A stretch of 64,000 nt of DNA from Oopsacas minuta (taxonomy: Eukaryota > Animalia > Porifera): contig JAKMXF010000288.1 in assembly GCA_024704765.1 (NCBI GenBank), forward strand, positions 485,445 through 549,444. Reading direction: 5' to 3'. Position 1 is the stretch's first letter; each line of letters begins with the position of its first letter. A program made the position numbers and the translations under genes. Of the stretch, positions 11,057 through 53,100 are shown one piece after another. Under the pieces are notes generated by a model. That model saw only the letters and a list, made by a program, of their open reading frames with translations. It had not been told where the DNA came from and ran no database searches.

Positions 11057-14000
11057 ATGTTTAGATTCAGAACTTTATTGAAATTCCACAATTCGCTAGT
11101 TGCTATTAATAGTAACAAATCTACTAACCATATTCTTACACGAAACAACCACCTAACTAACGAACAGTATCGTATCTATGGTAAGAGGTGAGGTGTTAAG
11201 ATTAATCATATTATACACACACCAGTTATTGTGCTATTTATAGATTGTGTCGGTATATGAGTGATACATCAGATGACCAATCAAAAGAGGATATAGTGGT
11301 GGTGGAATCTAAGCCACTAGTGGGAAGTGGTGAGTCACTTCAGCCAATTAAAATTCCTGATGTGTTTCCAGAGGTTTGTTTTCTTGTTTGTTTACTTGTT
11401 TGTTTGTTTGTTTGTTTGTTTGTTTGTTTGTTTGTTTGTATAATTTTTCGTATTCGTTAGTTTGTTCACTTGTATATATACATGTTTATTTTAATATGGA
11501 ACTAACAAATCTAGGTTCCAATTATAATCCTAGACAGAAACCCAGTATTCCCTAAATTCATCAGAATGGTAGAAATCTCTGAGCCAAATCTTGTCAAGAT
11601 CCTACGCGCCAAATTACGTATACGTCAGCCTTATGCTGGCGCATTCCTACGTAAAGACCCGTTGCCTAGCAACGAGAACACAGACCAATCTCCCCCCGAA
11701 GTATGCACAGATCTGGAGAGTGTCTACCCAGTAGGTGAGTAGTTATTCATACGGATAAGTTCATACGCTTAATGTTACTATTTTTAGGGACATTTGTACA
11801 AATATCAGATGTACATGACATGGGAGAAAGGATTAGAATGATCCTCCTTGGACACAGGTATGTAACTATGGAATGTTTGAGCTTTTTATAGCTGCCACTT
11901 TGGGTGTCAGGTATTGATTTGTTGTTGTTGACAAACTTATTGTAGACGTATAAAGATAACAGGAATCATAGATACATCTCAACAATCAAAATCTGAGGAA
12001 GAAGTGGCACAAAATGTGGCACAAGTGGCAGAGGACACAAAACCAATATTAATGGTGTCTGTTGAGAATTTGTTTACAAACACATTTAAATCAGATACAG
12101 AATCAAAAGCTCTATCTGCAGAGATTATTAAGACTATTCGAGATATTATGAGTCTGAATCAGCTGTATAAAGAATCACTTTCACACCTTTTGGATTCTGG
12201 GAAGAAAGATATTAACGCGCCATCTTCTCTCGCGGATTTCGCGGCTGCTCTCTCTAGCTCTGAACCACCTCTGGTACAACAGGTGAGAATTGAACCCTAT
12301 TATTACTGTGCTGACTATACATTGTATAGTGGCATGAAGCAGGAGGCCAATCTGAAGGGCTTAAGTCCGAACTTGGATTTAATCATATTTTCACACCTTT
12401 TGGTGAATTTTTCATAATTATCCTGGAGACTATCTTCCAGGTGTCAGTATAGTCTAAACAAATTCAAACAATAAGCTGATTTAATTTATACATACTCAAA
12501 AACAAATAAACAAACAAACAAACAAACAAACAAACTAGTAATATATTTGTAGGCCGTAGTTATAATTATTTGACACACAAACTAATCTTCCTTTTGGAGT
12601 TATAGCTACTCCTTGCGTGTAATTGAACATTCCTTTTTGGTGTCCTTCTTCTCCTATTGTGTGTAGGAGATTGCCTTCTGGAGAAAATACCCGAATTGAA
12701 TTTGTGTCTCTATCGCTAATAACAAAGTTGTTAAGTAGATCTATACAGAAGAAGTGAGGGCGTAACACATCCATTCCTTCTCCTTTCGTGATGAGGGTGT
12801 TTAGTTGCATTCCCTCTAGGGTTAACACATGCATGCACGAGTTGGTATTTGGACACAGTACGTACACGCGGTCACTTGACACTTTCACATCATATGGTCG
12901 ATATATTGACTGGTGAGTAATGTCGCGTATATAGTTCAGATGAGCGCCGTATACACTGATTCTGTCGTTGTTAGTGTCTGCTACGAACACGTGACCAATC
13001 TGATCAGTTGTTAGTTGTCTAGGAAAGTCGAATTGTCCTTTGTTTGAGCCCTTACCTCCTACCCACCTAACTAGACTCATGTTAGTTAGTCTGTATTTGT
13101 TAACAGTGTGATCTCCCCAGCAGCTGACATACAAACTGTCTGCGTGAATTGCTAAACCGTATGGCTTATCCAGTTCTCCTACACCCAGCTGTTTGAGGTA
13201 TTCTCCTGCAGCAGAAAATATCTCTACTGTGTTATTGTTGCGATTTGCTACGAAGATTTGGTGTGTGGCTTTATGTATAGGCAGGATGGCTACACCTGAT
13301 GGATAGTACAACTCGCCAGGATCTGAACCTCTCTTAGCAGTAGCGACAGTGGACGTTTTGAATGTACCATAATCTGGTACTCCTATTGCAACCTCTACGA
13401 TCTTACCGAGATGGGAGATTCTCCTTTCTAGGTCACGTTTGTTACACTCCCATTTTAATTTGGTCTCTACTCCCATTTTATTTCGCAGGTCTCGTAATTT
13501 GTCTTCAAATTCTTGAACAATTCTCTCCTGTATGAGTTGGAGGGGCTTTTCTCTCAGGTCTCCTTGGAGGTGTGCCTGGGCCGCAGTCAATTGGACGATC
13601 ATTTGTTGTTGAGCGATCTCTCCGGCTTTCTTATCCTTGTGTGCGTTGCGGACTTTCTTCAGTAACTCAACTCTGCGGGCATTCAGTAGCCCTATGAGAC
13701 CATCTATGGTTCGGTTAATGTGTTCCTCTATGGGGTCTACGAATTCTGGGGCGATTGAGTATCGGTATGCCATTCGGTGATGAATGTTGGGATAGTTTAG
13801 ATATGAATTGGTTGCTAGGGATAATCTTGTGTATTTATAGCTGTTATATGATTTAGTTTGTACAAGTAAACAAACAACAATAATTAGGTGATGTGAGTAT
13901 ATTTCTTGTTAGAATAAACACGAAGTTATACAGCTGTATGTTATTATGTCTCGTTGCTAGGATACTGTAAGGAATGTGGTTTAAAGTTCTTTCTCAGTAA

Positions 14001-42159: not shown

Positions 42160-43430
42160 ATGACAGAACTTGACAGAAGTTTGACTAACATTGATTGGCT
42201 AATCAGCTGTTCAAAAGATAAACAGCCAATCAATTCAAAGATTGAACAAAAACATTTTTGCGGGAATTGTCTTTATTGTTCCCGTCTCGGGACCCGTCCT
42301 AAACCCCAGAAAATCTCTCCTGGTCAATCAGATACCTCAATGAAATCCTCTTCTCCCAGGGCGCCAAATAAACCATCACATTCCTATGCTCATATCATAG
42401 CAACAGCTATTAAGAAATCTTCAAATCAGAAACTGACTCTAAATGAAATATATAGTTCTATCCTAGATACGTATCCGTACTTCAGGAATGCAGCACCTGG
42501 ATGGAAGGTATATATTCATATCTTAACACCTTATAGTTCCAGTATAAAATGTATCTATTTTTAGAACTCTGTGAGACACAACTTGTCACTTAATAAGCTC
42601 TTTAAGAGAGTAGCTCGTCCTAAAGGAGAATCTGGGAAGGTTGTAGCTATTTTTAGTAACATTCTATTTATAGTGACATGTTGTAATTATTATAGGGTGC
42701 TTACTGGGAGATTGACCAATCAGCTGTTTTGTTAGTTAAACGTGAGCCTAAATCTCTTCGAAAGATTGTAAGTCACAGATCAGCTGATTATGTAAATATT
42801 TTCAGACGTGTTATTCTATTTATAGAATTCTTCAAAGGTTAACACCTCTCCTATTATTCCTGTTCCCTATCCTCCTGTCCCCTATCCCATGTGTCATATG
42901 TATCCCTTCGAAACTCAGAACCATCTCAACCAATCATTTACAGCCTTTTATCGGTATATTATCACATATTTGACATGTTACCTTAGCAACCAAATTAATG
43001 TCTGTTTCTAGATCTCTGATAGAAGTACAGAGACTAGATGACGTCACGACTGATACCTCTACATTGGTGAGAGGACAGGGGGAACTGTTAGATGTAGACG
43101 TGTCAAGATTTGAGGGATTAGTATCTTCTATCAATCCGGGTATGCTGTTGTTGTTGTTGTTGTTGTTGTTGTTTTTATGAATATAAAGTAAACAAATACT
43201 TGAGGCTTGCTCTTATTATTATTGTTTATTATTGTTGTTGTTATTATTGATTAGCAGATGCAGTGTCAGGAGATCTGTTCAGGAGTCTCAAAGATTCATT
43301 CAGTAATTTCCTGAGGGGACTGTCCAATGGACCTGAAGTAGAGACCTACCCCAAGCAGTATCCACAAGAAGAGCTCTATTCTAGCAACGAACCATCCTCT
43401 CAGGAATTTGATTGGAATGCTATTTTATGA
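42160..43430 (+). CDS. FoxJ2/3: Forkhead transcription factor, FoxJ2/3 type
   Basis: N-terminal ELDRSLTNIDWL; forkhead domain split over three exons (KPSHSYAHII...GWK|NSVRHNLSLNKLF...GK|GAYWEID); C-terminal EFDWNAIL matches the FoxJ2/3 DFDWD motif. Confidence 0.88.
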
Positions 43431-43563
43431 TTATTCATATACCCGATCGCTTAGGATTTGTTTTAACTAAATTTTCTTTTTTATATAAACTGACACATTC
43501 CAATTCCTCAATTCTATCTCTATGATATTCCTGGTATAACTAGCAATCTGATTGGTTAACAGA

Positions 43564-46500
43564 ATGGTGGATGATAGTATAAATTGTCTCTCTTTCCTCT
43601 TGGAATGTAAGATTATAATCACAGGGCACACACCACTCCCTAGCAACGATAACTACACACAGGTATGCAGACTCAGCTCTGTTACAGAATTACCTACACA
43701 GGATGATGACGTCACGCGAAAATTTCAGAGTATTTTCCTGCGTCGAGTAGCTCTAGAGTATGACGAGATTAAATTTGTAATATTAACATTTAAGCGGACT
43801 TATTTGCATAGCAACCGAGAATCTCCTCTGGAATCTACACCATTCCAGAATCTACGTGTGGTTGCTAGGGAGGTGTGTATTGATAGAATACTTACTCAGG
43901 TTTGTGTAGAATAGTTTAACCAATCATATGTTTAGTTTATATTTCAAACAGCTGATGAGTCTATCTTCAGAATCTGACACCTTGGGAGAGGACAGTTTAT
44001 GGATGAGTGTAGCCAATCAGAATGCAGGGTCTCATGATTCTAGGTTCTTGTCTGCGTTACGACATTTAACCGGATGTGATACTGATACCTCTCCTCTCCC
44101 CGATCAGCTGTTACCAACTTTGGCGCACAAATTAGGAGAAAGTGACTTGGGAATTTCTGCTCTAATTAGGTTAGTTATCATCCATGGTCAGTTAGTGATA
44201 AACTCTCTAATCTGATTGGTCAATAGGATGCTGCGAGCAGGATGCGAGCAGATCAGAGGTGTCGAGTCATTGGAAAAAGTGGCATCGCGACACCAGGTGG
44301 TTTTCCCACCTGTGGAGACATTAGTGTCGCTTCAGGAATGTTCTCATACGATAGCACATCAGCTTATAAAAGAGGTTAGTTTCAGTTCCAATTGGAACAT
44401 AACAATATGATTATTTATTGCTAGGTTAAGGAGCGATCAGCTGACACAGGAAAATATTACTCACATTCCTCTTGTCTCAGTGAGTTGCTAGGTTACAGCA
44501 TAATAATGCCGAGTATAAATGTGAAATATTTGAACAATTCATGTTACATTCCTTTGAAGTCGTTGCCTGGTTACCCAAGAGATTTTCAAAGAATGTTACA
44601 GGTTAGTTACTATGTGAATAGATAGGAATGTTGGGAATGTTATATTTCTATTTTTAGAACAGTAACACGTTAAAACAGCAGAATAGTGAGTATACACATA
44701 AATTGTGTAAATTGACTCACGCAATTTTGAAGAAAATATTAAGAAACTCTGATAAACACCTCAAAAGCGCGCCTTTAATTTGGTTGAGTGACGTCATAAA
44801 TTCCCATCAGCTGTTAACTACACCTAAGTTTATGCGCGGGAAAGAAGAACAGCTGGTAGCTCATCCAGGATGGCGCCTAAATTTCTGTTATTTATTGCTG
44901 TTATTCTGTGAGCCTTTCTTCTCCCGCTCAGCCAATCAGAAGTTATCTTTAATAGCAATAGATTACGTCATCAGTAAGGAATGTAGATTGGATTTACCTA
45001 ATGAGTCTTGTCTAGCTAGAGGTGTTATCCCGCCCAGAACTGACACTAACACCCAATCAAATGTAAGTTTACTGATTTATACATATACTGTAAAACCTCG
45101 CAGATCTTGACAACCTTTGTAATTTATCTCAGAGGTTATACTGCATTCCTTTTACTACATTCTGTATCTAGGCAAACTTCATAACAGAAATATTCCATTT
45201 TACTCTGAGAGCTCTGAATCTATTATTAATTGCTCCGATGAACCAAGCTATGCAGGTTAGTTGTTTGTTTATTTATTTGTTGTTGTTTATCTGTCTGCTA
45301 GGTAGTGTCAGATCTATCCAAAGCAGCTCATAACATGTCTCCAGAGTCTCCGGAGAGGGAACGACTAGAGGAACTATCAGGCCTAACATTCATAACTTGG
45401 GACTTAACAATTCTTAACGAACAGTTTGCCCTTATGGTTTCACAATTCTATATAACAGCTGGTATATGGTTAAATATGAGTATTGAATCTAATCAGCTGA
45501 TTGAGGTGTGTGAATATAGTATACTCTGCTTAATATAGTCGCCGGTTAATCTGCTAACACCTTTTAAAACGGTCTCTGGTACTGGTATGACCCTATTTAG
45601 CTGAGTATACTGTTATAAATGATAACATTCCTGTCTTATCAATTCGTTGCTAGGCTCTATCCCATATTCCTGAATTCCTAATTAAAGACAGCTGTCAATG
45701 GTTCCGGTTTCTAGTGACGTCATCACCCAATCTATTCCGTCTCTTAGAAATGGCGCCTGTTATTGATTTATATGTTTTATTATTGGAGAGACAGGATCTA
45801 ATGCCTGGTCCTGTTAGCCAATCAAAAGTAAGTATTTATACATTCCAATCTATGTATTATGTAACTAGCGTATGAATTGTCACAGGTAGTCTCATTTCTA
45901 CTGAGTCTTGTGCAAACACAGCTGGGAAGTATATCAGCTGTTCAGCTGTCTACCAGCTGGTCCTCTGTCCACGGGGAGTTAGCTACCATCCTCCATTCCA
46001 ATCCTACTGTAAGGGATAAGTTAGGGCCTGCTCTCCTGTCCTGTTACACAGCTGTAGACGTAGTGGAGGGTCTGGATGTGGATAAAGACTCTTTTGATAA
46101 GTTTAGTGCCAGACAGGATATCACTAATCTAATTACACATTTATGGAACAGACAGGATTGTAGGTAAACAGATAGATTAATAGAAACAAACAAACAAACA
46201 AACAAACAAACAAACAAACAAATGAATGAATGAATTTCGCATTTCCTGTTTTCATAATGTAGGGATTCAGTGTTAAGACAGTGTAACACCTCGTTATTTC
46301 CAGCATTCCTTAACAGTATCCTAGATACACTCTTATATATGCTAAATGACAGCATTCACAGACTCAGGAATGCTCGCTTAATCCAGATTAGCATGGAGGA
46401 GGACAGCTGGTCACGTTTGACACCTCGTGAACAGAGAGCAAAGCAGGACTTCTTGAGTAGTGAGGAGAGAGTAACCAGAGGTTTCTTATCCATCTCTCAG

Positions 46501-49500
46501 ACAGCTCTCTCTCTCCTTCAGGTGTTAAGTGAGTCAGCTGATGTGTCTAGCATATTATCTCAACAACCTCTATGTCATAGAGTAGCATCTGCTTTCATTG
46601 GTCAGTTGTTGTTGTTGTTTAATATTTGTTTATGTTTACTTGGCGGGTTGCTAATTTGGAGGTAAACTACAAATTGAATATTTGAATTAATCTCATAGAA
46701 TATATTATACACAAGGTTTGACACCCCTATAGCTGTTATGATTGATAAGATTTCTATTTTTAGAAATATCGAACTGCTATTTATTGGGAATTATAATTCT
46801 CCAGAATTTCTTGTCACTTCCGTTATAATTATCCTGGAAGACAGTTACCATATACGGACAGGATAGCTAATATGAACCAAACCATTTGTTCCAATAAGAA
46901 TTATTATATGAGTAAATATGAAATGTCTTTATTATAAGCAAGGTTCTGGGTCTAAGAGGAAGAGGTGTTTCGACATACCGGATATAAGAACCATCTTTAT
47001 CACACTTCTATTAATGTAGATATTTTGTATTATTTGTAACAAATATAACATAAAAGTAGTTATAATTTAATTAAGAAAATTTGATATTTTGTTATTTGCA
47101 AATTATAGAAATAAGTTTACTGAGAAAGAACTTTCAACCACATTCCTTACAGTATCCTAGCAACGAGACATAATAACATACAGCTGTACAACCTCGTGTT
47201 TATTCTAACAAGAATTATACTCACATCATCCAATTATTGTTGTTTGTTTACTTGACAAACTAAACCATATTACAGCTATAAATGCACAAGATTATCCCTA
47301 GCAACCAATTCATATCTAAACTATTCCAACATTCATCATCAAATGGCATACCGATGCTCAATCGCCCACAAGTCATAGACCCCATAGAGGAACACATCAA
47401 CTATACCATAGATTGTCTCATAGGGCTACTGAATGTCCGCAGAGCTCAGCTGCTGGAGCTAGCCCACAATATCCCCGAAGACAAGAGAGCCGCAGAGATC
47501 GCTCGAGATCAAATGATCGCCCAACTGACAGAGGCCCAAGCACACCTCCAAGGAGACTTAAGAGAAAATCCCCTCCAGTCCATGCAAGAGAGAATGGCCC
47601 AAGAAATGAACGACAAATTACGAGATCTACAAAATATCATCCCCGTAGAGACACAATTAAAGTGGCAGTGTGACACACGTGACCTAGAAACGAGCATTTC
47701 CCATCTAGGAGAGATCATACAGGTACCAGTAGGAGCACCAGATTATGCTAAATTCCAAACTTCCACTGTTGCTACTGGGAAGAAAGGTAGAGGTCCTGGC
47801 GAGTTGCCTTGCCCATTAGGTGTAGCTATACATGAAGATACACACCAAATATTTGTAGCTAATAATCTCAATAAGAGAGTAGAGATATTCTCTGACACAG
47901 GCGAGTACCTCAATCAGCTGGGTGTAGGACAGCTGGATCAGCCATGGGGTATAGCTATACACGGAGAGGATGTGTATGTCAGCTGCTTGGAAGTTAGCAC
48001 TGTAAACCAATTCACACTAACTGACATGAGTCTTGTTAGGAAGATAGGAGGTGAGGGATCAAACAACGGACAATTCAACAGTCCTAGACAACTAACAACA
48101 GAATCAGCGTACACGACACAAACCTGAACCATCTACGTAACATTACTCATCAGTCAATGACACTACCATATGATGTTAAAGTGTCACGTGACCGCATGTA
48201 CGTACTGTGTCCATATAACAACCCGTGTATGCTGGTGCTAACCCTAGAGGAAGACAAGCTACACTCCCTCATTACCTCTGGACAAGGAATGGATGTGTTA
48301 TACCCTTCCTTCTTCTGTCTAGATCCATTTAATAACTTTGGTTTTAGCAATCAAGAATCTCACTCAATTCGGGTATTCTCTCCAGAAGGCAATCTCCTAC
48401 ACACGATAGAAACAAAGGGAGACCAACAAGGAATGTTATTTGAGCCCGGAGGAATAGCTATAACTCCTAATGGGAGATTAGTTAGTGTGTCAAATAATAG
48501 GCACTACAGTCTACAAATATATTATTAGTTTGTTTGTTTGTTTATTTGTTTGTTTTGTTTATATTTATCAATAAATATCCCAAATTATTCTTTACCAAAT
48601 TTGATTTTGTCTTTGAATTTATTCTACATATTTGATTTGAATTCCGTTGCTAGGGTTTTTTGACTCCCTCTGCGGTCCCAGAGCTAAGGAAATAAATGTC
48701 AGGAAGAAAGAGAATTTCAAGTTCGAACCTAAACGGCTATTACGCGGGCTTTCTCAGGTGACAGCTCAGATATTATCAGCTGATCAAGGAAAATTCTATT
48801 CTGCTCTGTTAACCAATCAGGATTTAGAGATTAGTTCTTTTAGGAAAATGTGTCAAGTGGTTTCAGAGGAGGGTGTCAGCTGGTCAAACAGCTGTTATAA
48901 ACTACTTGATAGATTGGTTAGTTATTTCTGGAACTAATTAACAAATATGATACATACTATAAAACTAACTTTTATCTTTTCAGTCAGCTGATATTGTCCC
49001 TGAGCGATCAGCTGATCTACAAGATCTCACCTGGTTATCTCAAGGTGTTGAAATGGAACTTGGCCTTGATTCCCTAACAGAGGCATATATTGTGTCTCTA
49101 GGGGAGAGCCAATATGACTCATGCTCCCTAGCAACATGTCATACATTAAGGAATGCATTACCAGAAGGAGCGCCATCTCAAACCAGACTTAAATCTCTCT
49201 TAAAAGAGGTTAGCAACGCTTTAATATAATAGGAATGTATGCTTATTATTTGTATAGGCTTCTCAGCTACAAGAATCTCTGCCTCTTCATCCGGACTCTT
49301 CAATATTTGTCCGTCAAGATGAAGACAGAATGGATTTAGTGCGGGGGTTAATAACAGGACCGACTGGCTCTCCGTATGCTTATGGATGCTTCCAATTTGA
49401 TTGTTTGTTTCCCCAGAATTATCCGGCGATACCTCCACTTGTTAAGTTCTGTACTACAGGGGGCGGGACCGTGCGGTTTAATCCGAACCTCTACGCTGAC

Positions 49501-50029
49501 GGGAAGGTGTGTCTGTCACTTCTGGGGACATGGCACGGAGGTGACCAATCAGAGAAATGGGATCCTCAGGTATCTATAAATAGACCCAGATTATAGCAGT
49601 GATTTGATTGGTTGTTTGTAGGTGTCATCTCTTTATCAGGTGTTAGTTTCAATTCAGGGAATTATTTTAATTCCTGAACCTCTGTATAATGAACCCGGAT
49701 ATGAGAGTATCAGGGGGACAGAGGAGGGTGTCAGGAGGAGCAAAGAGACCAACTCAGAATTAGCTCTATTTACAGTAAGACACGCAATGTGTGACGTCAT
49801 TAGAAATCCACCTGATGGATTCCAGGAACTAATCCAGGTATTTGATTGGTTGAATTTGTTAATTCCATGTAAAGATTAACCAATCAAATTTTAGATTCAT
49901 TTCTCACTTTTAAAGCCACAAATCTTGTCTCAGTGCCATAAATGGATACAGGAGTGTCCGGCCAATCAAATGCGAGGACGTCTGATCAGAGCAGTCCAAC
50001 AGCTGAAAGAAATTCTTGACACCTTATGA
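43564..50029 (+). CDS. UBE4/Ufd2-core protein with a C-terminal BIRC6-type ubiquitin-conjugating (UBC) domain and no U-box
   Basis: Ufd2-core motifs [10 protein letters not shown]...[18 protein letters not shown] and [11 protein letters not shown]...FEPKRLL. These splice in phase to [21 protein letters not shown]...[19 protein letters not shown], which retains the catalytic Cys. Stop at 50027-50029; the exact start is uncertain. Confidence 0.82.
47343..48528 (+). pseudogene. Frameshifted paralog of the 12535-13773 NHL gene, inside an intron of the UBE4-UBC gene
   Basis: The homologous ATG at 47343 is followed by a 1-nt deletion and a stop within 12 codons. A second frameshifting deletion of about 43 nt at about 48100 removes [14 protein letters not shown]. 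Confidence 0.85.
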
Positions 50030-50142
50030 ATTATTCTATTTTTAGATATTAGATTGATTGGCTGATTGTATATTGAGTTATGACGTAACTATCCACAGTC
50101 CTGGGTAGCTATAAATAGGAGTAAATCTGTGTTAGTTTAGAA

Positions 50143-53100
50143 ATGAAAAATCTTTTTATTTTTGCTCTTTTTCTGTATTTTGTTTCTGCTCAGGAATTTC
50201 TAACATTCCATAGCAACGGATCTGTTGCTAGGTTTGAAGAATGGCGCCCTGGATCTGCTGGGAGAATCAGATTTCAGTTTAGAACACGATTTGACAACAA
50301 AACTTTGTTTGAAATTTCTTCACAGAATGTCAGCTGGTCGGTTAGAATTGAAAGTTCAATAATTGTCAGAGAATATCAGCTGATTCTTAACCAACCAAAT
50401 CGCTTTCTTACGAAAGAAAAATTTCTTCAGAATAATTTTATTCTGGAAGATAATTGGGTAAATTTTGTTGTCAGAATAACTAATCAAACTCTATCTTTCA
50501 AAGTGTCAGATTCTGTAATCTCATTTCCAATCTTACAACATTCCTATCTATTCAATTGGTTGTTAGGGAATGAACAAGACAATTTCATTGGTTGCATAAA
50601 GAATGTTGGGCTAGCCAATCAGAGCTCAGGATTTCTACCTGTTACTCCTGCTAATTTTACCAAAGTTACAATTGGAACTAATTGTGCTAGAAAATGTAAC
50701 TCAAATTCCTGTGAAAATGGTCGTTGCTTAGAAAACTATCAATCAGCTGTTTGTGATTGTACCGGAACTATGTTTAGTGGAGAAAGGTGTGAAATTGGTG
50801 AGTTATTTGAAGTTATTTTAGTAACAATTATTTATTTGCTATTTATAGAAATCACTACAACCCGCTCTCTCAAATATTCATTCGTTAACCAATCAGATTC
50901 GTTTATAGAATTGGCGCCTTGGGAGTATAATATAGGCGGGAAACTTAGAATACATTTTGCAACAATTCACACCTCAGTTCCTATTATAACTCTCTCAGCC
51001 AATCAATTGCTTCTCAGCTGTAGAATTAATTCTGATGGACTGGTAACAGCTGAGCTCAGAAATTTCTCTAATCATATTAGTCAGCTGATTTTATCAGATA
51101 CTAATGTTGTTGACAATGACTGGATCATTTTATCTTTCATTATAATTTATGGCGGATTTATGATTCAAGTACGATCAGGAGCAGTTACACAATCAGCTGT
51201 TCTCTCAGCTGAATGGACACCTGAACAGCTGGTACCGATATTGGGGGCAACTACCGAATCCGATAATTTCATTGGTTGTATGAAAGGTTTTAAAGTGTCA
51301 AATGGCTCAGAATCTGATCTGGTTAACGCACCAATTTTGAGAACTAAAGGAGTTATTTTTGGTTCCAGTTGTGTCGACAGGTGTCAAAATGTGTCGTGTG
51401 GAGATGGCACATGTGTGAATGCCTGGAGCGGACACATTTGTGACTGCAGTGACACTTTAAAAAGTGGCGCATATTGTTCAGAAGGTAAATATTATTCTAT
51501 TAATTTTGGCCAATCAAAATTATTACATTGAATTTTTATGGAATCAACAGATGCCAGTCTGTAATTAGCCAATGAAATATGTTATTTGATTAATCATATC
51601 ATCACACCTTTATAGATATTTTCTAGAAATTGTGAACCAATCAGAATTTGCTATTTTCATAAAACCTTTTAAGTTATATTATTTGAATTGTAAATTCCAT
51701 AAATTTCTGAATGGATTCTTAACCAATCAAATTCTCTAGAAAATGGAGTCTGCTCGCCAATCAGATTCCATACAAACTAGAATTCAGATTGGTTAATTCT
51801 ATGAATGAAATTTGTTTAGATTCCAATCAAATTGGATTATTTGGAAACGAATCAGCTGATTTCTATCTTGAACAGAATCCCCGCCTAAACTATCTCTCAT
51901 TAATGTTCCGTAGTCTCACTGAGGAGGGCAGAATCCTATTGGTCAGATCCTCACAGACTTATCACACATCAAATCATCAAACAGCTGTTCTAACCTTACA
52001 AACAGCTGATTTACAGCTGTACTTCTCTAAGTATATCCTTAAGATTACAGTTAACATAGCTGGAGTTACAAGTTCCATTAACATATCAGCGTTGCTATGG
52101 TCAGGGTACTCTTCAGAATATTGGAATTTTGTTGCAATAAAATTCAACAAAAATTCTATTGAAATTAAGGTTTGTTCTATTTTTAGAATTAATTATTATT
52201 TTATTGGTTGCTATGCTAGGTCAATGGAATGCAAGGTATCTTGACAACAGCTAGCTGGGATTGGCATTCAGATAGAATTGAAATAGGTAGCGGTATGATT
52301 GGATGTTTTTCTCAATTTATCGTCAACAGATTTCAGGTTTGATTTTAGGCGCCAGAATCCTTATTAACGTAAATTTCTGAGTTATCTGTAATCAGCTGAT
52401 TCTGAGACTAGCCAATCAAATGGTAGATAGAAGCAATACTACATTACTATAAATTCTATTTTTAGAAACTTAGTGAGAGATCAGCTGTGAGCAGAACCTG
52501 TCCTTCTCACACCTCTCTATCCGTATACATTCCATTCTCACAGGATCGTATCCAGGGACTAAGCATTAATGTAATATACAAACTTCTGAATTCTATTTTA
52601 AGATAACTTCTCTTAGAATTGAATTATATTTATTACTCAAAACTATAATCTGGAGTTTCAGCTGTTTATACAAATTGGATCTCCCATTGAGATATTTCTA
52701 TTTCTAAGATCTTAACAATTCGTGACATCAGCTGTCTTCTGTACTATTTATAACTCTTACAAATATTCTAGAATGTGTGGATACAGAGCAGATTAATTAT
52801 ATTACAGTTAGAGTTTTTATTGGCTAATCAACAGCTGTCCAATGGACTCATGTACCTCTCTCTCCCTCTCCTAGACTTACAGCTGATTATTAGTGTTATA
52901 CAACAAACAGTAATAATGACGTCATTGAATTATCAGCTGATTAGTGAAATTAAAGTTAGAGATTTTGCTTGGCATAAATTAGAAATTGTTTTAAGATCAG
53001 CTGGTAACAGGTATGTAATTTAATTAGTAAATAATCAGCTGATTAATATAATTATTTTCTAGTACTTTAATCCGATTGGCTGTTGACAGTCACTCAGAAT

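What the first reader, a model, noticed from the sequence alone, without database searches (positions are those of the whole stretch)
43564..50029. E4-E2 chimera: UBE4/Ufd2 core with its U-box replaced by a BIRC6-type UBC domain
Seen: the protein follows UBE4 colinearly to the helix after FEPKRLL. Where UBE4 has the U-box (PDEFxDP motif), it has only a 30-aa linker and then [14 protein letters not shown]...[12 protein letters not shown]...[11 protein letters not shown]...[13 protein letters not shown], which matches the BIRC6/UBE2O/UBE2Z class of E2 with the catalytic Cys intact. The splice phases at 46598/48654, 48916/48984 and 49208/49258 all fit one ORF. Established: Ufd2/UBE4 binds Cdc48/p97 and Rad23 and uses the U-box to recruit an E2. 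Inference: the recruiter has been replaced by a covalently attached E2, giving a self-contained E2/E3-hybrid chain-elongating enzyme. I do not know this architecture from characterised proteins.
Basis: partly seen in the sequence, partly recalled or inferred. Interest (0 to 1): 0.85.

Follow-up and report, generated by a model that had tools for sequence, protein, structure and literature searches.

The report
E4 core fused to an E2
This glass-sponge gene does encode one protein in which the body of a ubiquitin-chain-extending enzyme (UBE4/Ufd2) carries its own ubiquitin-conjugating (E2) domain instead of the usual U-box. It belongs to an old, widespread and apparently unstudied eukaryotic family and is not a sponge invention.

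Summary
A 15-exon, all GT-AG gene (43564-50029, + strand) gives one 1170-aa ORF. It comprises a Ufd2/UBE4 trunk, a linker of about 30 aa, and a BIRC6-type UBC domain with its N-terminal extension, catalytic Cys1035 and NPN motif. Spliced RNA contigs support 13 of the 14 introns, including the three that join core to UBC. The window holds no U-box.

This is not a sponge-specific chimera. The same Ufd2P_core + UQ_con architecture occurs in about 90 of the best 120 protein clusters found with the amphioxus orthologue. These come from sponges, cnidarians, molluscs, annelids, brachiopods, amphioxus, green algae (Chlamydomonas Cre12.g510300), haptophytes, chytrids and amoebozoans. Sources mostly call them 'uncharacterized', or give automatic E4-like or BIRC6-like labels.

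On a tree of the core region the family separates from canonical Ufd2/UBE4B by one strongly supported branch. It coexists with canonical U-box genes in several species. The UBC active-site block is invariant across the 37 members aligned.

I found no paper that describes this architecture. The most likely function is a third kind of E2/E3 hybrid, an E4 trunk carrying its own E2, but that is an inference. Interest is moderate to high for the family and ordinary for this one gene.

The parts
43564..44601 (+). Exons 1-4 (43564-43899, 43952-44169, 44227-44374, 44425-44601): start codon and the N-terminal helical region that precedes the Pfam core (aa 1-293).
   Evidence: Gene model. RNA joints or loose ends support introns 2 and 3. 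Intron 1 lay outside the laid stretch, but its position is conserved in a second hexactinellid locus. The ATG has an in-frame stop upstream in both sponges. No N-terminal extension like that of relatives is found upstream.
44658..48916 (+). Exons 5-11 (44658-45062, 45172-45255, 45302-45505, 45654-45827, 45886-46163, 46263-46600, 48654-48916): Ufd2P_core / E4 trunk (about aa 294-875).
   Evidence: Pfam PF10408, profile positions 39-613 of 628. All introns are supported by spliced X4 contigs. The AlphaFold model of the amphioxus orthologue superposes on yeast Ufd2 2QJ0, 3M62 and 9KHS.
46601..48653 (+). Intron 10 (2053 nt). It holds nested NHL-repeat ORFs (47282-48124 and 48088-48525) and is not part of the E4-E2 protein.
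   Evidence: Joint 46600/48654 in RNA. Pfam NHL, E 9.8e-06. A second, diverged copy lies at 12538-13834 on the minus strand.
48984..49070 (+). First part of exon 12: a variable linker of about 29 aa (aa 876-904) in the position where canonical E4s carry the U-box.
   Evidence: In relatives this segment has variable length (about 30-110 aa) and is poorly conserved. It has low pLDDT in the model.
49071..49208 (+). Second part of exon 12: BIRC6-type N-terminal extension of the UBC domain (aa 905-950, Y-x3-L-x4-Y/F-D motif).
   Evidence: The family profile A1 hits only BIRC6/dBruce (3CEG residues 25-99, E 1.8e-10).
49258..49837 (+). Exons 13-14 (49258-49569, 49622-49837): UBC catalytic domain (aa 951-1126). 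It contains the NPN motif (from 49480), the five-residue loop GGGTV (49459-49473) and the catalytic Cys1035 codon TGT (49510-49512).
   Evidence: Pfam UQ_con, E 8.6e-20. BIRC6 3CEG at 6e-42 and 1.6e-15. The active-site block is invariant in 37 relatives. Coordinates.
49895..50029 (+). Exon 15: C-terminal helices of the extended UBC domain and the stop codon (50027-50029).
   Evidence: RNA joint 49837/49895. The C-terminus and stop are conserved in the second hexactinellid. The model aligns with full-length 3CEG (285 columns, TM 0.86).

Best explanation
The gene is the glass-sponge orthologue of an ancient, conserved and uncharacterised eukaryotic family. In this family a Ufd2/UBE4-type helical trunk is followed directly by a BIRC6-class extended UBC (E2) domain instead of a U-box.

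Shown:
- One spliced transcript and one ORF.
- Both domains are intact.
- The catalytic Cys, the NPN motif and the BIRC6-type extension are conserved.
- Family membership.

Inferred: an E1 charges the protein on Cys1035. The trunk, which in yeast Ufd2 binds the ubiquitylated substrate or acceptor chain, brings the acceptor to the protein's own E2 active site. The protein would then extend or branch ubiquitin chains without a separate E3. That would make it an E2/E3 (E2/E4) hybrid in the manner of BIRC6 and UBE2O.
For: Gene and transcript:
- 15 exons give a 1170-aa ORF.
- Ten spliced joints plus three loose-end junctions are seen in RNA run X4, with similar depth on both halves.
- A colinear orthologue with 55-78% identity per segment, the same start and stop, and the same large intron exists in a second hexactinellid assembly.

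Family:
- BLASTP gives a single end-to-end HSP with amphioxus P0003 (35% over 1170 aa) and 42% with the demosponge Dysidea. Canonical Ufd2/UBE4B match at only 19-25% and only in the core.
- Every long hit to a core exon carries Ufd2P_core + UQ_con.
- About 90 of the best 120 clusters share this architecture across Metazoa, Chlorophyta, Haptophyta, chytrids and Amoebozoa.
- On the core tree the family is separated from canonical E4s by a branch with SH-aLRT 99-100, and Metazoa form a clade at 100.

Catalytic competence:
- RFNPNLY...[11 protein letters not shown] is invariant in 37 members.
- The UBC domain is 52-66% identical from sponge to algae, against 20-38% for the trunk. This points to strong constraint on the E2 part.

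Structure: the AF2 model of the orthologue has pLDDT 87.9 and pTM 0.87. Its best matches are yeast Ufd2, including the Ufd2/Ubc4-Ub/K29-diUb complexes, followed by BIRC6 UBC at TM 0.86.

Precedent: BIRC6 and UBE2O carry the closest UBC domains and are the only two E2s so far stated to act without an E3 (PMC12818219). Yeast Ufd2 binds K29-linked chains through its own N-terminal loops (PMC5303827).
Against: No biochemical data exist for any family member. Whether the trunk still binds ubiquitin chains, Cdc48/p97 or Rad23 was not testable. The yeast K29-binding loops lie in the poorly conserved N-terminal region (12-21% identity here), and the sponge protein has the shortest N-terminus in the family. 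The only functional hint in the literature is that the Chlamydomonas member occurs in plus-gamete cilia (PMC9561859), which says nothing about mechanism.
Confidence: 0.6

Rival explanations
1. The protein is an ordinary E2 that still needs separate RING, U-box or HECT partners. The Ufd2 trunk would serve only to localise or regulate it, for example by docking to p97/Cdc48 or proteasome shuttle factors, and would not select the acceptor.
For: Many large E2s cooperate with E3s; UBE2O is also reported to cooperate with other E3 ligases (abstract of PMC10393103). No substrate-binding site in the trunk was shown here. Trunk conservation is modest (20-38%).
Against: The nearest UBC relatives (BIRC6, UBE2O) are the E2s known to work without an E3 (PMC12818219). 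The trunk has stayed joined to the UBC across supergroups, and the model has a high pTM of 0.87. Both suggest a fixed functional unit.
Confidence: 0.27
2. The UBC domain is not used catalytically. It would act as a pseudo-E2 or UEV-like ubiquitin-binding or autoinhibitory module attached to an E4 scaffold.
For: Pfam gives a weak secondary UEV match (E 0.0013, below the cut-off).
Against: The catalytic Cys, the NPN (HPN-equivalent) motif and the surrounding block are invariant across 37 members from several supergroups. UEVs lack the Cys.
Confidence: 0.05
3. Annotation or assembly artefact: two adjacent genes (an E4-like gene that lost its U-box and a separate UBC gene) are joined only by read-through or by the reader's choice of splice sites.
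For: Contigs cannot prove that a single molecule spans all 15 exons (caveat stated).
Against: Exon 12 is an internal exon. It is spliced on its 5' side to the last core exon and on its 3' side to the UBC exon, in frame and at the same depth. The same fusion is predicted independently in dozens of genomes and transcriptomes and in a second hexactinellid locus.
Confidence: 0.02
4. A recent, sponge-specific domain swap: the U-box of the sponge's own UBE4 was replaced by a copy of the BIRC6 UBC.
For: The UBC is 60-70% identical to human BIRC6 over the catalytic exon.
Against: Both halves group with the same fusion family from other phyla and kingdoms. They do not group with canonical UBE4B or with sponge BIRC6-like proteins such as Corticium P0155.
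Confidence: 0.01

Closest known systems
Ufd2 (yeast) / UBE4B and UBE4A (animals): U-box E4 chain-elongation and chain-branching ligases
   Same: The same helical Ufd2P_core trunk, colinear to the last core helix (Pfam positions 39-613 of 628). The model of the orthologue superposes on 2QJ0, 3M62 and 9KHS over 820-990 columns.
   Different: There is no U-box. Identity is only 19-25%. The protein belongs to a separate group on the core tree (SH-aLRT 99-100). The N-terminus is short. It carries an E2 domain in cis instead of recruiting one.
BIRC6 / BRUCE (giant E2/E3 hybrid)
   Same: The closest UBC domain (3CEG, E 6e-42; TM 0.86 and 44% identity for the orthologue model). It shares the N-terminal extension motif, the NPN motif, the five-residue insertion loop before the NPN motif (GGHSV in BIRC6 against GGGTV here; PMC13623948) and the C-terminal helices.
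   Different: There are no BIR or other BIRC6 domains. The protein has 1170 aa against about 4860. In the UBC tree the fusion family lies apart from BIRC6-like sequences, though support is only 87.
UBE2O (E2/E3 hybrid) and UBE2Z
   Same: The same class of extended UBC domain (PDB E-values about 1e-24 and 1e-22; fold matches TM 0.75-0.82). UBE2O has a similar size and the same logic of substrate-binding domains in cis.
   Different: They are more distant than BIRC6. Their non-catalytic regions are unrelated (UBE2O has SH3-like CR domains, not an armadillo-like E4 trunk).
Uncharacterised orthologues: Branchiostoma LOC118417258 (P0003/P0044), Lingula LOC106153808, Nematostella LOC5513359, Dysidea avara 'E4 A-like' (P0068), Chlamydomonas Cre12.g510300 'UBC21' (P0126), Volvox, Rhizophlyctis rosea HDV00_004255, Cavostelium (P0083)
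   Same: The same architecture from end to end: trunk, variable linker, BIRC6-type UBC. The sponge protein nests in the metazoan clade next to Dysidea.
   Different: The sponge protein is the shortest, with no disordered N-terminal region of 280-450 aa and the shortest linker. Some protist members add UBA-like or UIM domains. None has been studied. Chlamydomonas UBC21 is only listed as an E2 (PMC7522501) and detected in plus-gamete cilia (PMC9561859).

Membership tests
Canonical E4 ligases (Ufd2/UBE4A/UBE4B) | Ufd2P_core helical trunk | tested here: met
   PF10408 on four exons, profile positions 39-613 of 628. The orthologue model matches yeast Ufd2 structures.
Canonical E4 ligases (Ufd2/UBE4A/UBE4B) | C-terminal U-box that recruits a separate E2 | tested here: not met
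   No U-box appears in the ORF by Pfam or anywhere in the window by TBLASTN (best E 0.39). The position is taken by a linker plus UBC.
Canonical E4 ligases (Ufd2/UBE4A/UBE4B) | Groups with Ufd2/UBE4B on a tree of the core | tested here: not met
   It falls in the core+UBC group, separated from 14-19 canonical sequences by SH-aLRT 99-100. UBE4A was not sampled.
BIRC6-class extended UBC (E2) domains | UBC fold with catalytic Cys and HPN-type (NPN) motif | tested here: met
   UQ_con E 8.6e-20. 3CEG E 6e-42. Cys1035 and NPN are present and invariant in the family.
BIRC6-class extended UBC (E2) domains | N-terminal extension (E-x-Y-V-x2-M/L-x3-Q-F-D) and C-terminal helices | tested here: met
   Profile A1 hits 3CEG residues 25-99 at E 1.8e-10, and only BIRC6/dBruce. 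The last exons align to 3CEG 189-258. The model covers 285 of 292 residues of 3CEG. The sponge linker exon alone gave no PDB hit.
BIRC6 orthologues | BIR domain and the giant BIRC6 scaffold | tested here: not met
   The ORF has 1170 aa. The only other Pfam match is a sub-threshold UEV hit that overlaps the UQ_con region.
Ufd2-core + UBC fusion family (uncharacterised) | Colinear trunk-linker-UBC in one polypeptide, and closer to family members than to canonical E4s in both halves | tested here: met
   Single end-to-end HSPs to the Branchiostoma, Owenia, Actinia and Oculina orthologues; Nematostella from aa 42 and Lingula from aa 148 to the C-terminus. Core tree. UBC tree. Spliced RNA.
E2/E3 hybrid enzymes (functional class: BIRC6, UBE2O) | E1-dependent thioester on the UBC Cys and E3-independent substrate ubiquitylation | not testable with these tools
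   This needs biochemistry. Only the conservation of catalytic residues is shown.
E4 function (Ufd2) | Binding of ubiquitin chains, Cdc48/p97 and Rad23/Dsk2 UBL by the trunk | not testable with these tools
   The yeast binding loops (residues 35-55 and 75-111; PMC5303827) lie in the region that is only 12-21% identical here. No reliable mapping was possible.

The most novel reading that the evidence does not exclude
The Ufd2-core + UBC family is a third, near-LECA-old class of E3-independent E2/E3 hybrid, a 'self-charging E4'. It would recognise already ubiquitylated (possibly p97-bound) substrates with its trunk and extend or branch their chains with its own BIRC6-type active site. It would have escaped study because it was lost from vertebrates, ecdysozoans, yeasts and land plants.
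Probability: 0.45. Interest if true: 0.8.

Novelty: new variant of a known kind. Interest (0 to 1): 0.6.

Why it matters
E4 enzymes and E2/E3 hybrids are both small, much-studied classes. A 2025 paper still states that BIRC6 and UBE2O are the only two E2s that act without an E3 (PMC12818219). A conserved protein that joins an E4 trunk to a BIRC6-type E2 would be a natural single-chain version of the Ufd2-U-box-E2 assembly.

It could show how acceptor-chain binding and catalysis are coupled in chain branching. The family is present in tractable organisms (Chlamydomonas, Nematostella, amphioxus, chytrids), so the idea can be tested directly.

For the sponge genome itself the gene is an ordinary orthologue. 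It adds to a pattern seen elsewhere in this genome, where old fused ubiquitin enzymes lost from model organisms are retained.

Tried and rejected
- phmmer of the sponge linker exon alone against the PDB gave nothing relevant. Only the family profile revealed the BIRC6-type extension.
- A search for a hidden U-box exon in the window, the introns and the flanks was negative.
- A search for an N-terminal extension upstream, like that of relatives, was negative. The upstream ORFs belong to another gene ending at TGA 43428-43430.
- Literature searches for the architecture found no description (Ufd2P_core + UQ_con, Ufd2 + UBC domain, E4 core + hybrid, Cre12.g510300, the Grau-Bove 2015 survey). Burroughs et al. 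2008 and Tong et al. 2025 are not held, so an earlier mention cannot be excluded.
- The search of earlier findings held no note on a canonical UBE4 in this genome, so whether the sponge also has a U-box E4 is open.
- One MAFFT --auto run timed out and was repeated with faster settings.
- Hit P0002 is a low-complexity false positive.
- Rejected explanations: read-through artefact, sponge-specific swap, pseudo-E2 (see rival explanations).
Full report
**1. What is in the sequence**

ORF scans and three-frame translation show a multi-exon gene on the + strand between 43.5 and 50.0 kb. Pfam assigns Ufd2P_core to four exon translations, together covering profile positions 39-613 of 628. It assigns UQ_con (E 8.6e-20) to 49258-49593. 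Against solved structures, the UBC exon matches the BIRC6 UBC domain best (3CEG, E 6e-42). UBE2O (about 1e-24) and UBE2Z (about 1e-22) follow, and ordinary E2s score only about 1e-11. The next exon gives the same order.

**2. One transcript or two genes**

Four public runs of one sample hold the region. Three behave as DNA and give unspliced contigs. Run X4 gives spliced contigs.

Laid on 44130-50120, X4 shows ten GT..AG joints:
- 44374/44425
- 44601/44658
- 45062/45172
- 45505/45654
- 45827/45886
- 46163/46263
- 46600/48654
- 48916/48984
- 49208/49258
- 49837/49895

Three further junctions appear as loose ends (44169/44227, 45255/45302, 49569/49622). Contig depth is similar (about 1000-1300) on both halves of the gene.

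Exon 12 (48984-49208) is an internal exon spliced to the last core exon on one side and to the UBC exon on the other.

Joining 15 exons (43564-50029) gives one 1170-aa ORF with no stop. Contigs cannot prove that single molecules span the whole gene. Intron 1 (43899/43952) lay outside the laid stretch.

A locus from a second hexactinellid assembly (L001) contains a colinear orthologue. It covers aa 2-1162 at 55-78% identity per segment, has a gap at the same place as intron 1, and has a large intron at the same position as intron 10. Its start codon (with an in-frame stop upstream in both species) and its C-terminus and stop are conserved.

**3. No U-box**

The ORF has no U-box by Pfam. TBLASTN with eight canonical U-box C-termini gives only noise across the whole window (best E 0.39). 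All introns but one are 46-148 nt. The 2053-nt intron 10 holds NHL-repeat ORFs. The next gene starts at 50143, and the previous one ends at 43430.

**4. Anatomy**

| Residues | Feature |
|---|---|
| aa 1-293 | N-terminal helical region |
| about 294-875 | Ufd2 core |
| 876-904 | variable linker |
| 905-950 | N-terminal UBC extension |
| 951-1126 | UBC core |
| 1127-1170 | C-terminal helices |

The UBC core contains the loop GGGTV (1018-1022), NPN (from 1025) and Cys1035 (codon 49510-49512).

The sponge extension alone gave no PDB hit. A profile of the same segment from 17 relatives plus the sponge hits only BIRC6 and Drosophila BRUCE, at 3CEG residues 25-99 (E 1.8e-10). This aligns the sponge '[16 protein letters not shown]' with the BIRC6 'LEEKYVAVMKKLQFDT'.

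A 2026 paper shows that the five-residue insertion loop gates BIRC6 towards UBA6 (residues 4649-4653; PMC13623948). That loop has the same length here. I draw no conclusion on E1 choice from this.

**5. It is a family, not a sponge invention**

phmmer of core exon 10 against 1.84 billion representatives gave only 43 hits. All nine of the long top hits scanned carry Ufd2P_core, and eight of them also carry UQ_con; the ninth, a 421-aa fragment, has the core only. Their sources are amphioxus, gastropods, a green alga and environmental eukaryotes, all labelled uncharacterised or hypothetical.

A search with the amphioxus protein (residues 900-1436) listed 120 clusters, about 90 of which have PF10408 + PF00179:
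- Chordates: Branchiostoma (3 species)
- Lophotrochozoans: Lingula, a chiton, many gastropods, Owenia
- Cnidarians: corals, sea anemones including Nematostella
- Sponges: the demosponge Dysidea
- Green algae: Chlamydomonas, Volvox, Trebouxia, Bryopsis, Ulva, Scenedesmus, Haematococcus
- Haptophytes
- Chytrid fungi
- EukProt protists, including the amoebozoans Cavostelium and Sexangularia

No vertebrate, arthropod, echinoderm, land plant or dikaryan fungus appears with this architecture among those 120; the only nematode hit (Plectus) carries the UBC domain without the core. An orthologue at bilaterian distance would have ranked there.

The spliced sponge protein aligns with amphioxus in one HSP (35% over 1170 aa) and with Dysidea at 42%. 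Canonical Ufd2/UBE4B match at 19-25% in the core only.

**6. Trees**

On 606 core columns (quick IQ-TREE, LG+C20), the 38 core+UBC sequences are separated from 14 and then 19 canonical sequences (fungal Ufd2, metazoan UBE4B) by one branch with SH-aLRT 100 and 99. Metazoa form a clade (100) with the two sponges together (82). Green algae, haptophytes and chytrids also group by taxon. This pattern fits one old origin and vertical descent with many losses. UBE4A was not sampled and the root is not inferred.

On 227 UBC columns the family sits on one side of a branch (SH-aLRT 87), apart from BIRC6-like sequences, except for one long-branch ciliate sequence.

Canonical core+U-box genes coexist with the fusion in Rhizophlyctis rosea, Lingula, Gigantopelta, Branchiostoma lanceolatum, Liolophura and the genera Haliotis and Gaertneriomyces (different species compared in these two). 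The fusion is therefore a paralogue, not a replacement.

**7. Constraint**

The block RFNPNLY...[11 protein letters not shown] is invariant in 37 members. The one exception looks like a broken gene model.

| Region | Identity of the sponge protein to relatives |
|---|---|
| UBC core | 52-66%, even to algae |
| Trunk | 20-38% |
| N-terminal region | 12-21% |
| Linker | 0-22% |

The E2 part is under the strongest constraint. This argues for a working active site.

**8. Structure**

The spliced sponge protein cannot be given to the tool by reference. I therefore modelled the amphioxus orthologue (residues 277-1436, the part colinear with the sponge protein) with a 52-sequence family alignment. 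The model has mean pLDDT 87.9 and pTM 0.87, and confidence is low only in short loops and the linker.

Foldseek against the PDB puts yeast Ufd2 first (2QJ0, 2QIZ, 3M62/3M63). The 2025 cryo-EM complexes of Ufd2/Ubc4-Ub with K29-linked ubiquitin follow (9KHS, 9KHT; 820-990 columns, TM by target 0.57-0.66). Next come BIRC6 UBC (3CEG, 285 columns, TM 0.86, 44% identity), UBE2O and UBE2Z.

**9. Literature**

No paper in the library joins Ufd2P_core with UQ_con in one protein. The Chlamydomonas member Cre12.g510300 is listed among E2s (PMC7522501). As 'UBC21' it is reported in plus-gamete cilia (PMC9561859), and neither paper comments on its architecture. The 2015 survey of ubiquitin-system architectures does not mention Ufd2 in its main text.

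A 2025 paper states that BIRC6 and UBE2O are the only two E2s acting without an E3 (PMC12818219). Yeast Ufd2 adds K48 branches to K29 chains that it binds through two N-terminal loops (PMC5303827). Two papers that might mention the fusion are not held.

**10. Mechanism**

Shown:
- An expressed single-chain Ufd2 trunk plus an intact BIRC6-class UBC domain.
- Conservation of this arrangement since before the split of the sampled supergroups.

Inferred (about 0.6): the UBC is charged by an E1 and transfers ubiquitin to acceptors held by its own trunk, with no separate E3. This would be an E2/E4 hybrid analogous to BIRC6 and UBE2O.

Main rival (about 0.27): an E2 that still needs other E3s, with the trunk serving as a docking or regulatory module.

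Pseudo-enzyme, artefact and sponge-specific swap explanations are unlikely (see rival explanations).

**11. Verdict**

The gene is an ordinary orthologue of a widespread family known only from automatic annotation. The family as a whole is an unstudied variant of E4 and E2/E3-hybrid enzymes and is worth experimental attention.

Noticed in passing
window 47282-48528 (+), inside intron 10; second copy at 12538-13834 (-): Nested NHL-repeat ORFs in two frames (47282-48124 and 48088-48525), which implies a frameshift or a tiny intron. A diverged copy elsewhere in the window is about 64% identical in protein. Contig depth over 47.1-48.5 kb is roughly 5- to 70-fold that of the flanks in the DNA-like runs and is also high in the RNA run. 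This points to a multi-copy, expressed gene family or element that landed in the intron.
   Followed up: partly
L001 10588-12444 (second hexactinellid, orthologous intron): In the related sponge the orthologous large intron holds no NHL gene. Instead it holds about 1.9 kb of a 33-nt tandem repeat, called as a 618-aa ORF of 'LFLENILEYKN' units. The intron position is conserved but its content is not.
   Followed up: partly
window 43428-43564 and 50029-50143: Intergenic spacers are very short. About 133 nt separate the stop of the upstream gene from this ATG, and about 113 nt separate this stop from the ATG of the neurexin-like LamG/EGF gene. Thirteen of the 14 introns are 46-148 nt.
   Followed up: no
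window 45252-45288, 46170-46239, 48517-48569: TTTG/TTGT-rich microsatellites (they translate as FVCLFVCLF...) sit in introns 6, 9 and 10. The reads tool skipped them as repeats.
   Followed up: no
relatives P0127, P0130, P0152: Some protist members of the core+UBC family carry extra N-terminal UBA-like (PF22566, PF14555) or UIM (PF02809) domains. These are ubiquitin-binding modules, which fits a role on ubiquitylated substrates.
   Followed up: no
exons 12-15, window 48984-50029: All exon boundaries from the end of the core onward lie between codons (phase 0). The whole linker+UBC module is therefore built of symmetric exons. Whether intron positions are shared with other phyla was not checked.
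   Followed up: no
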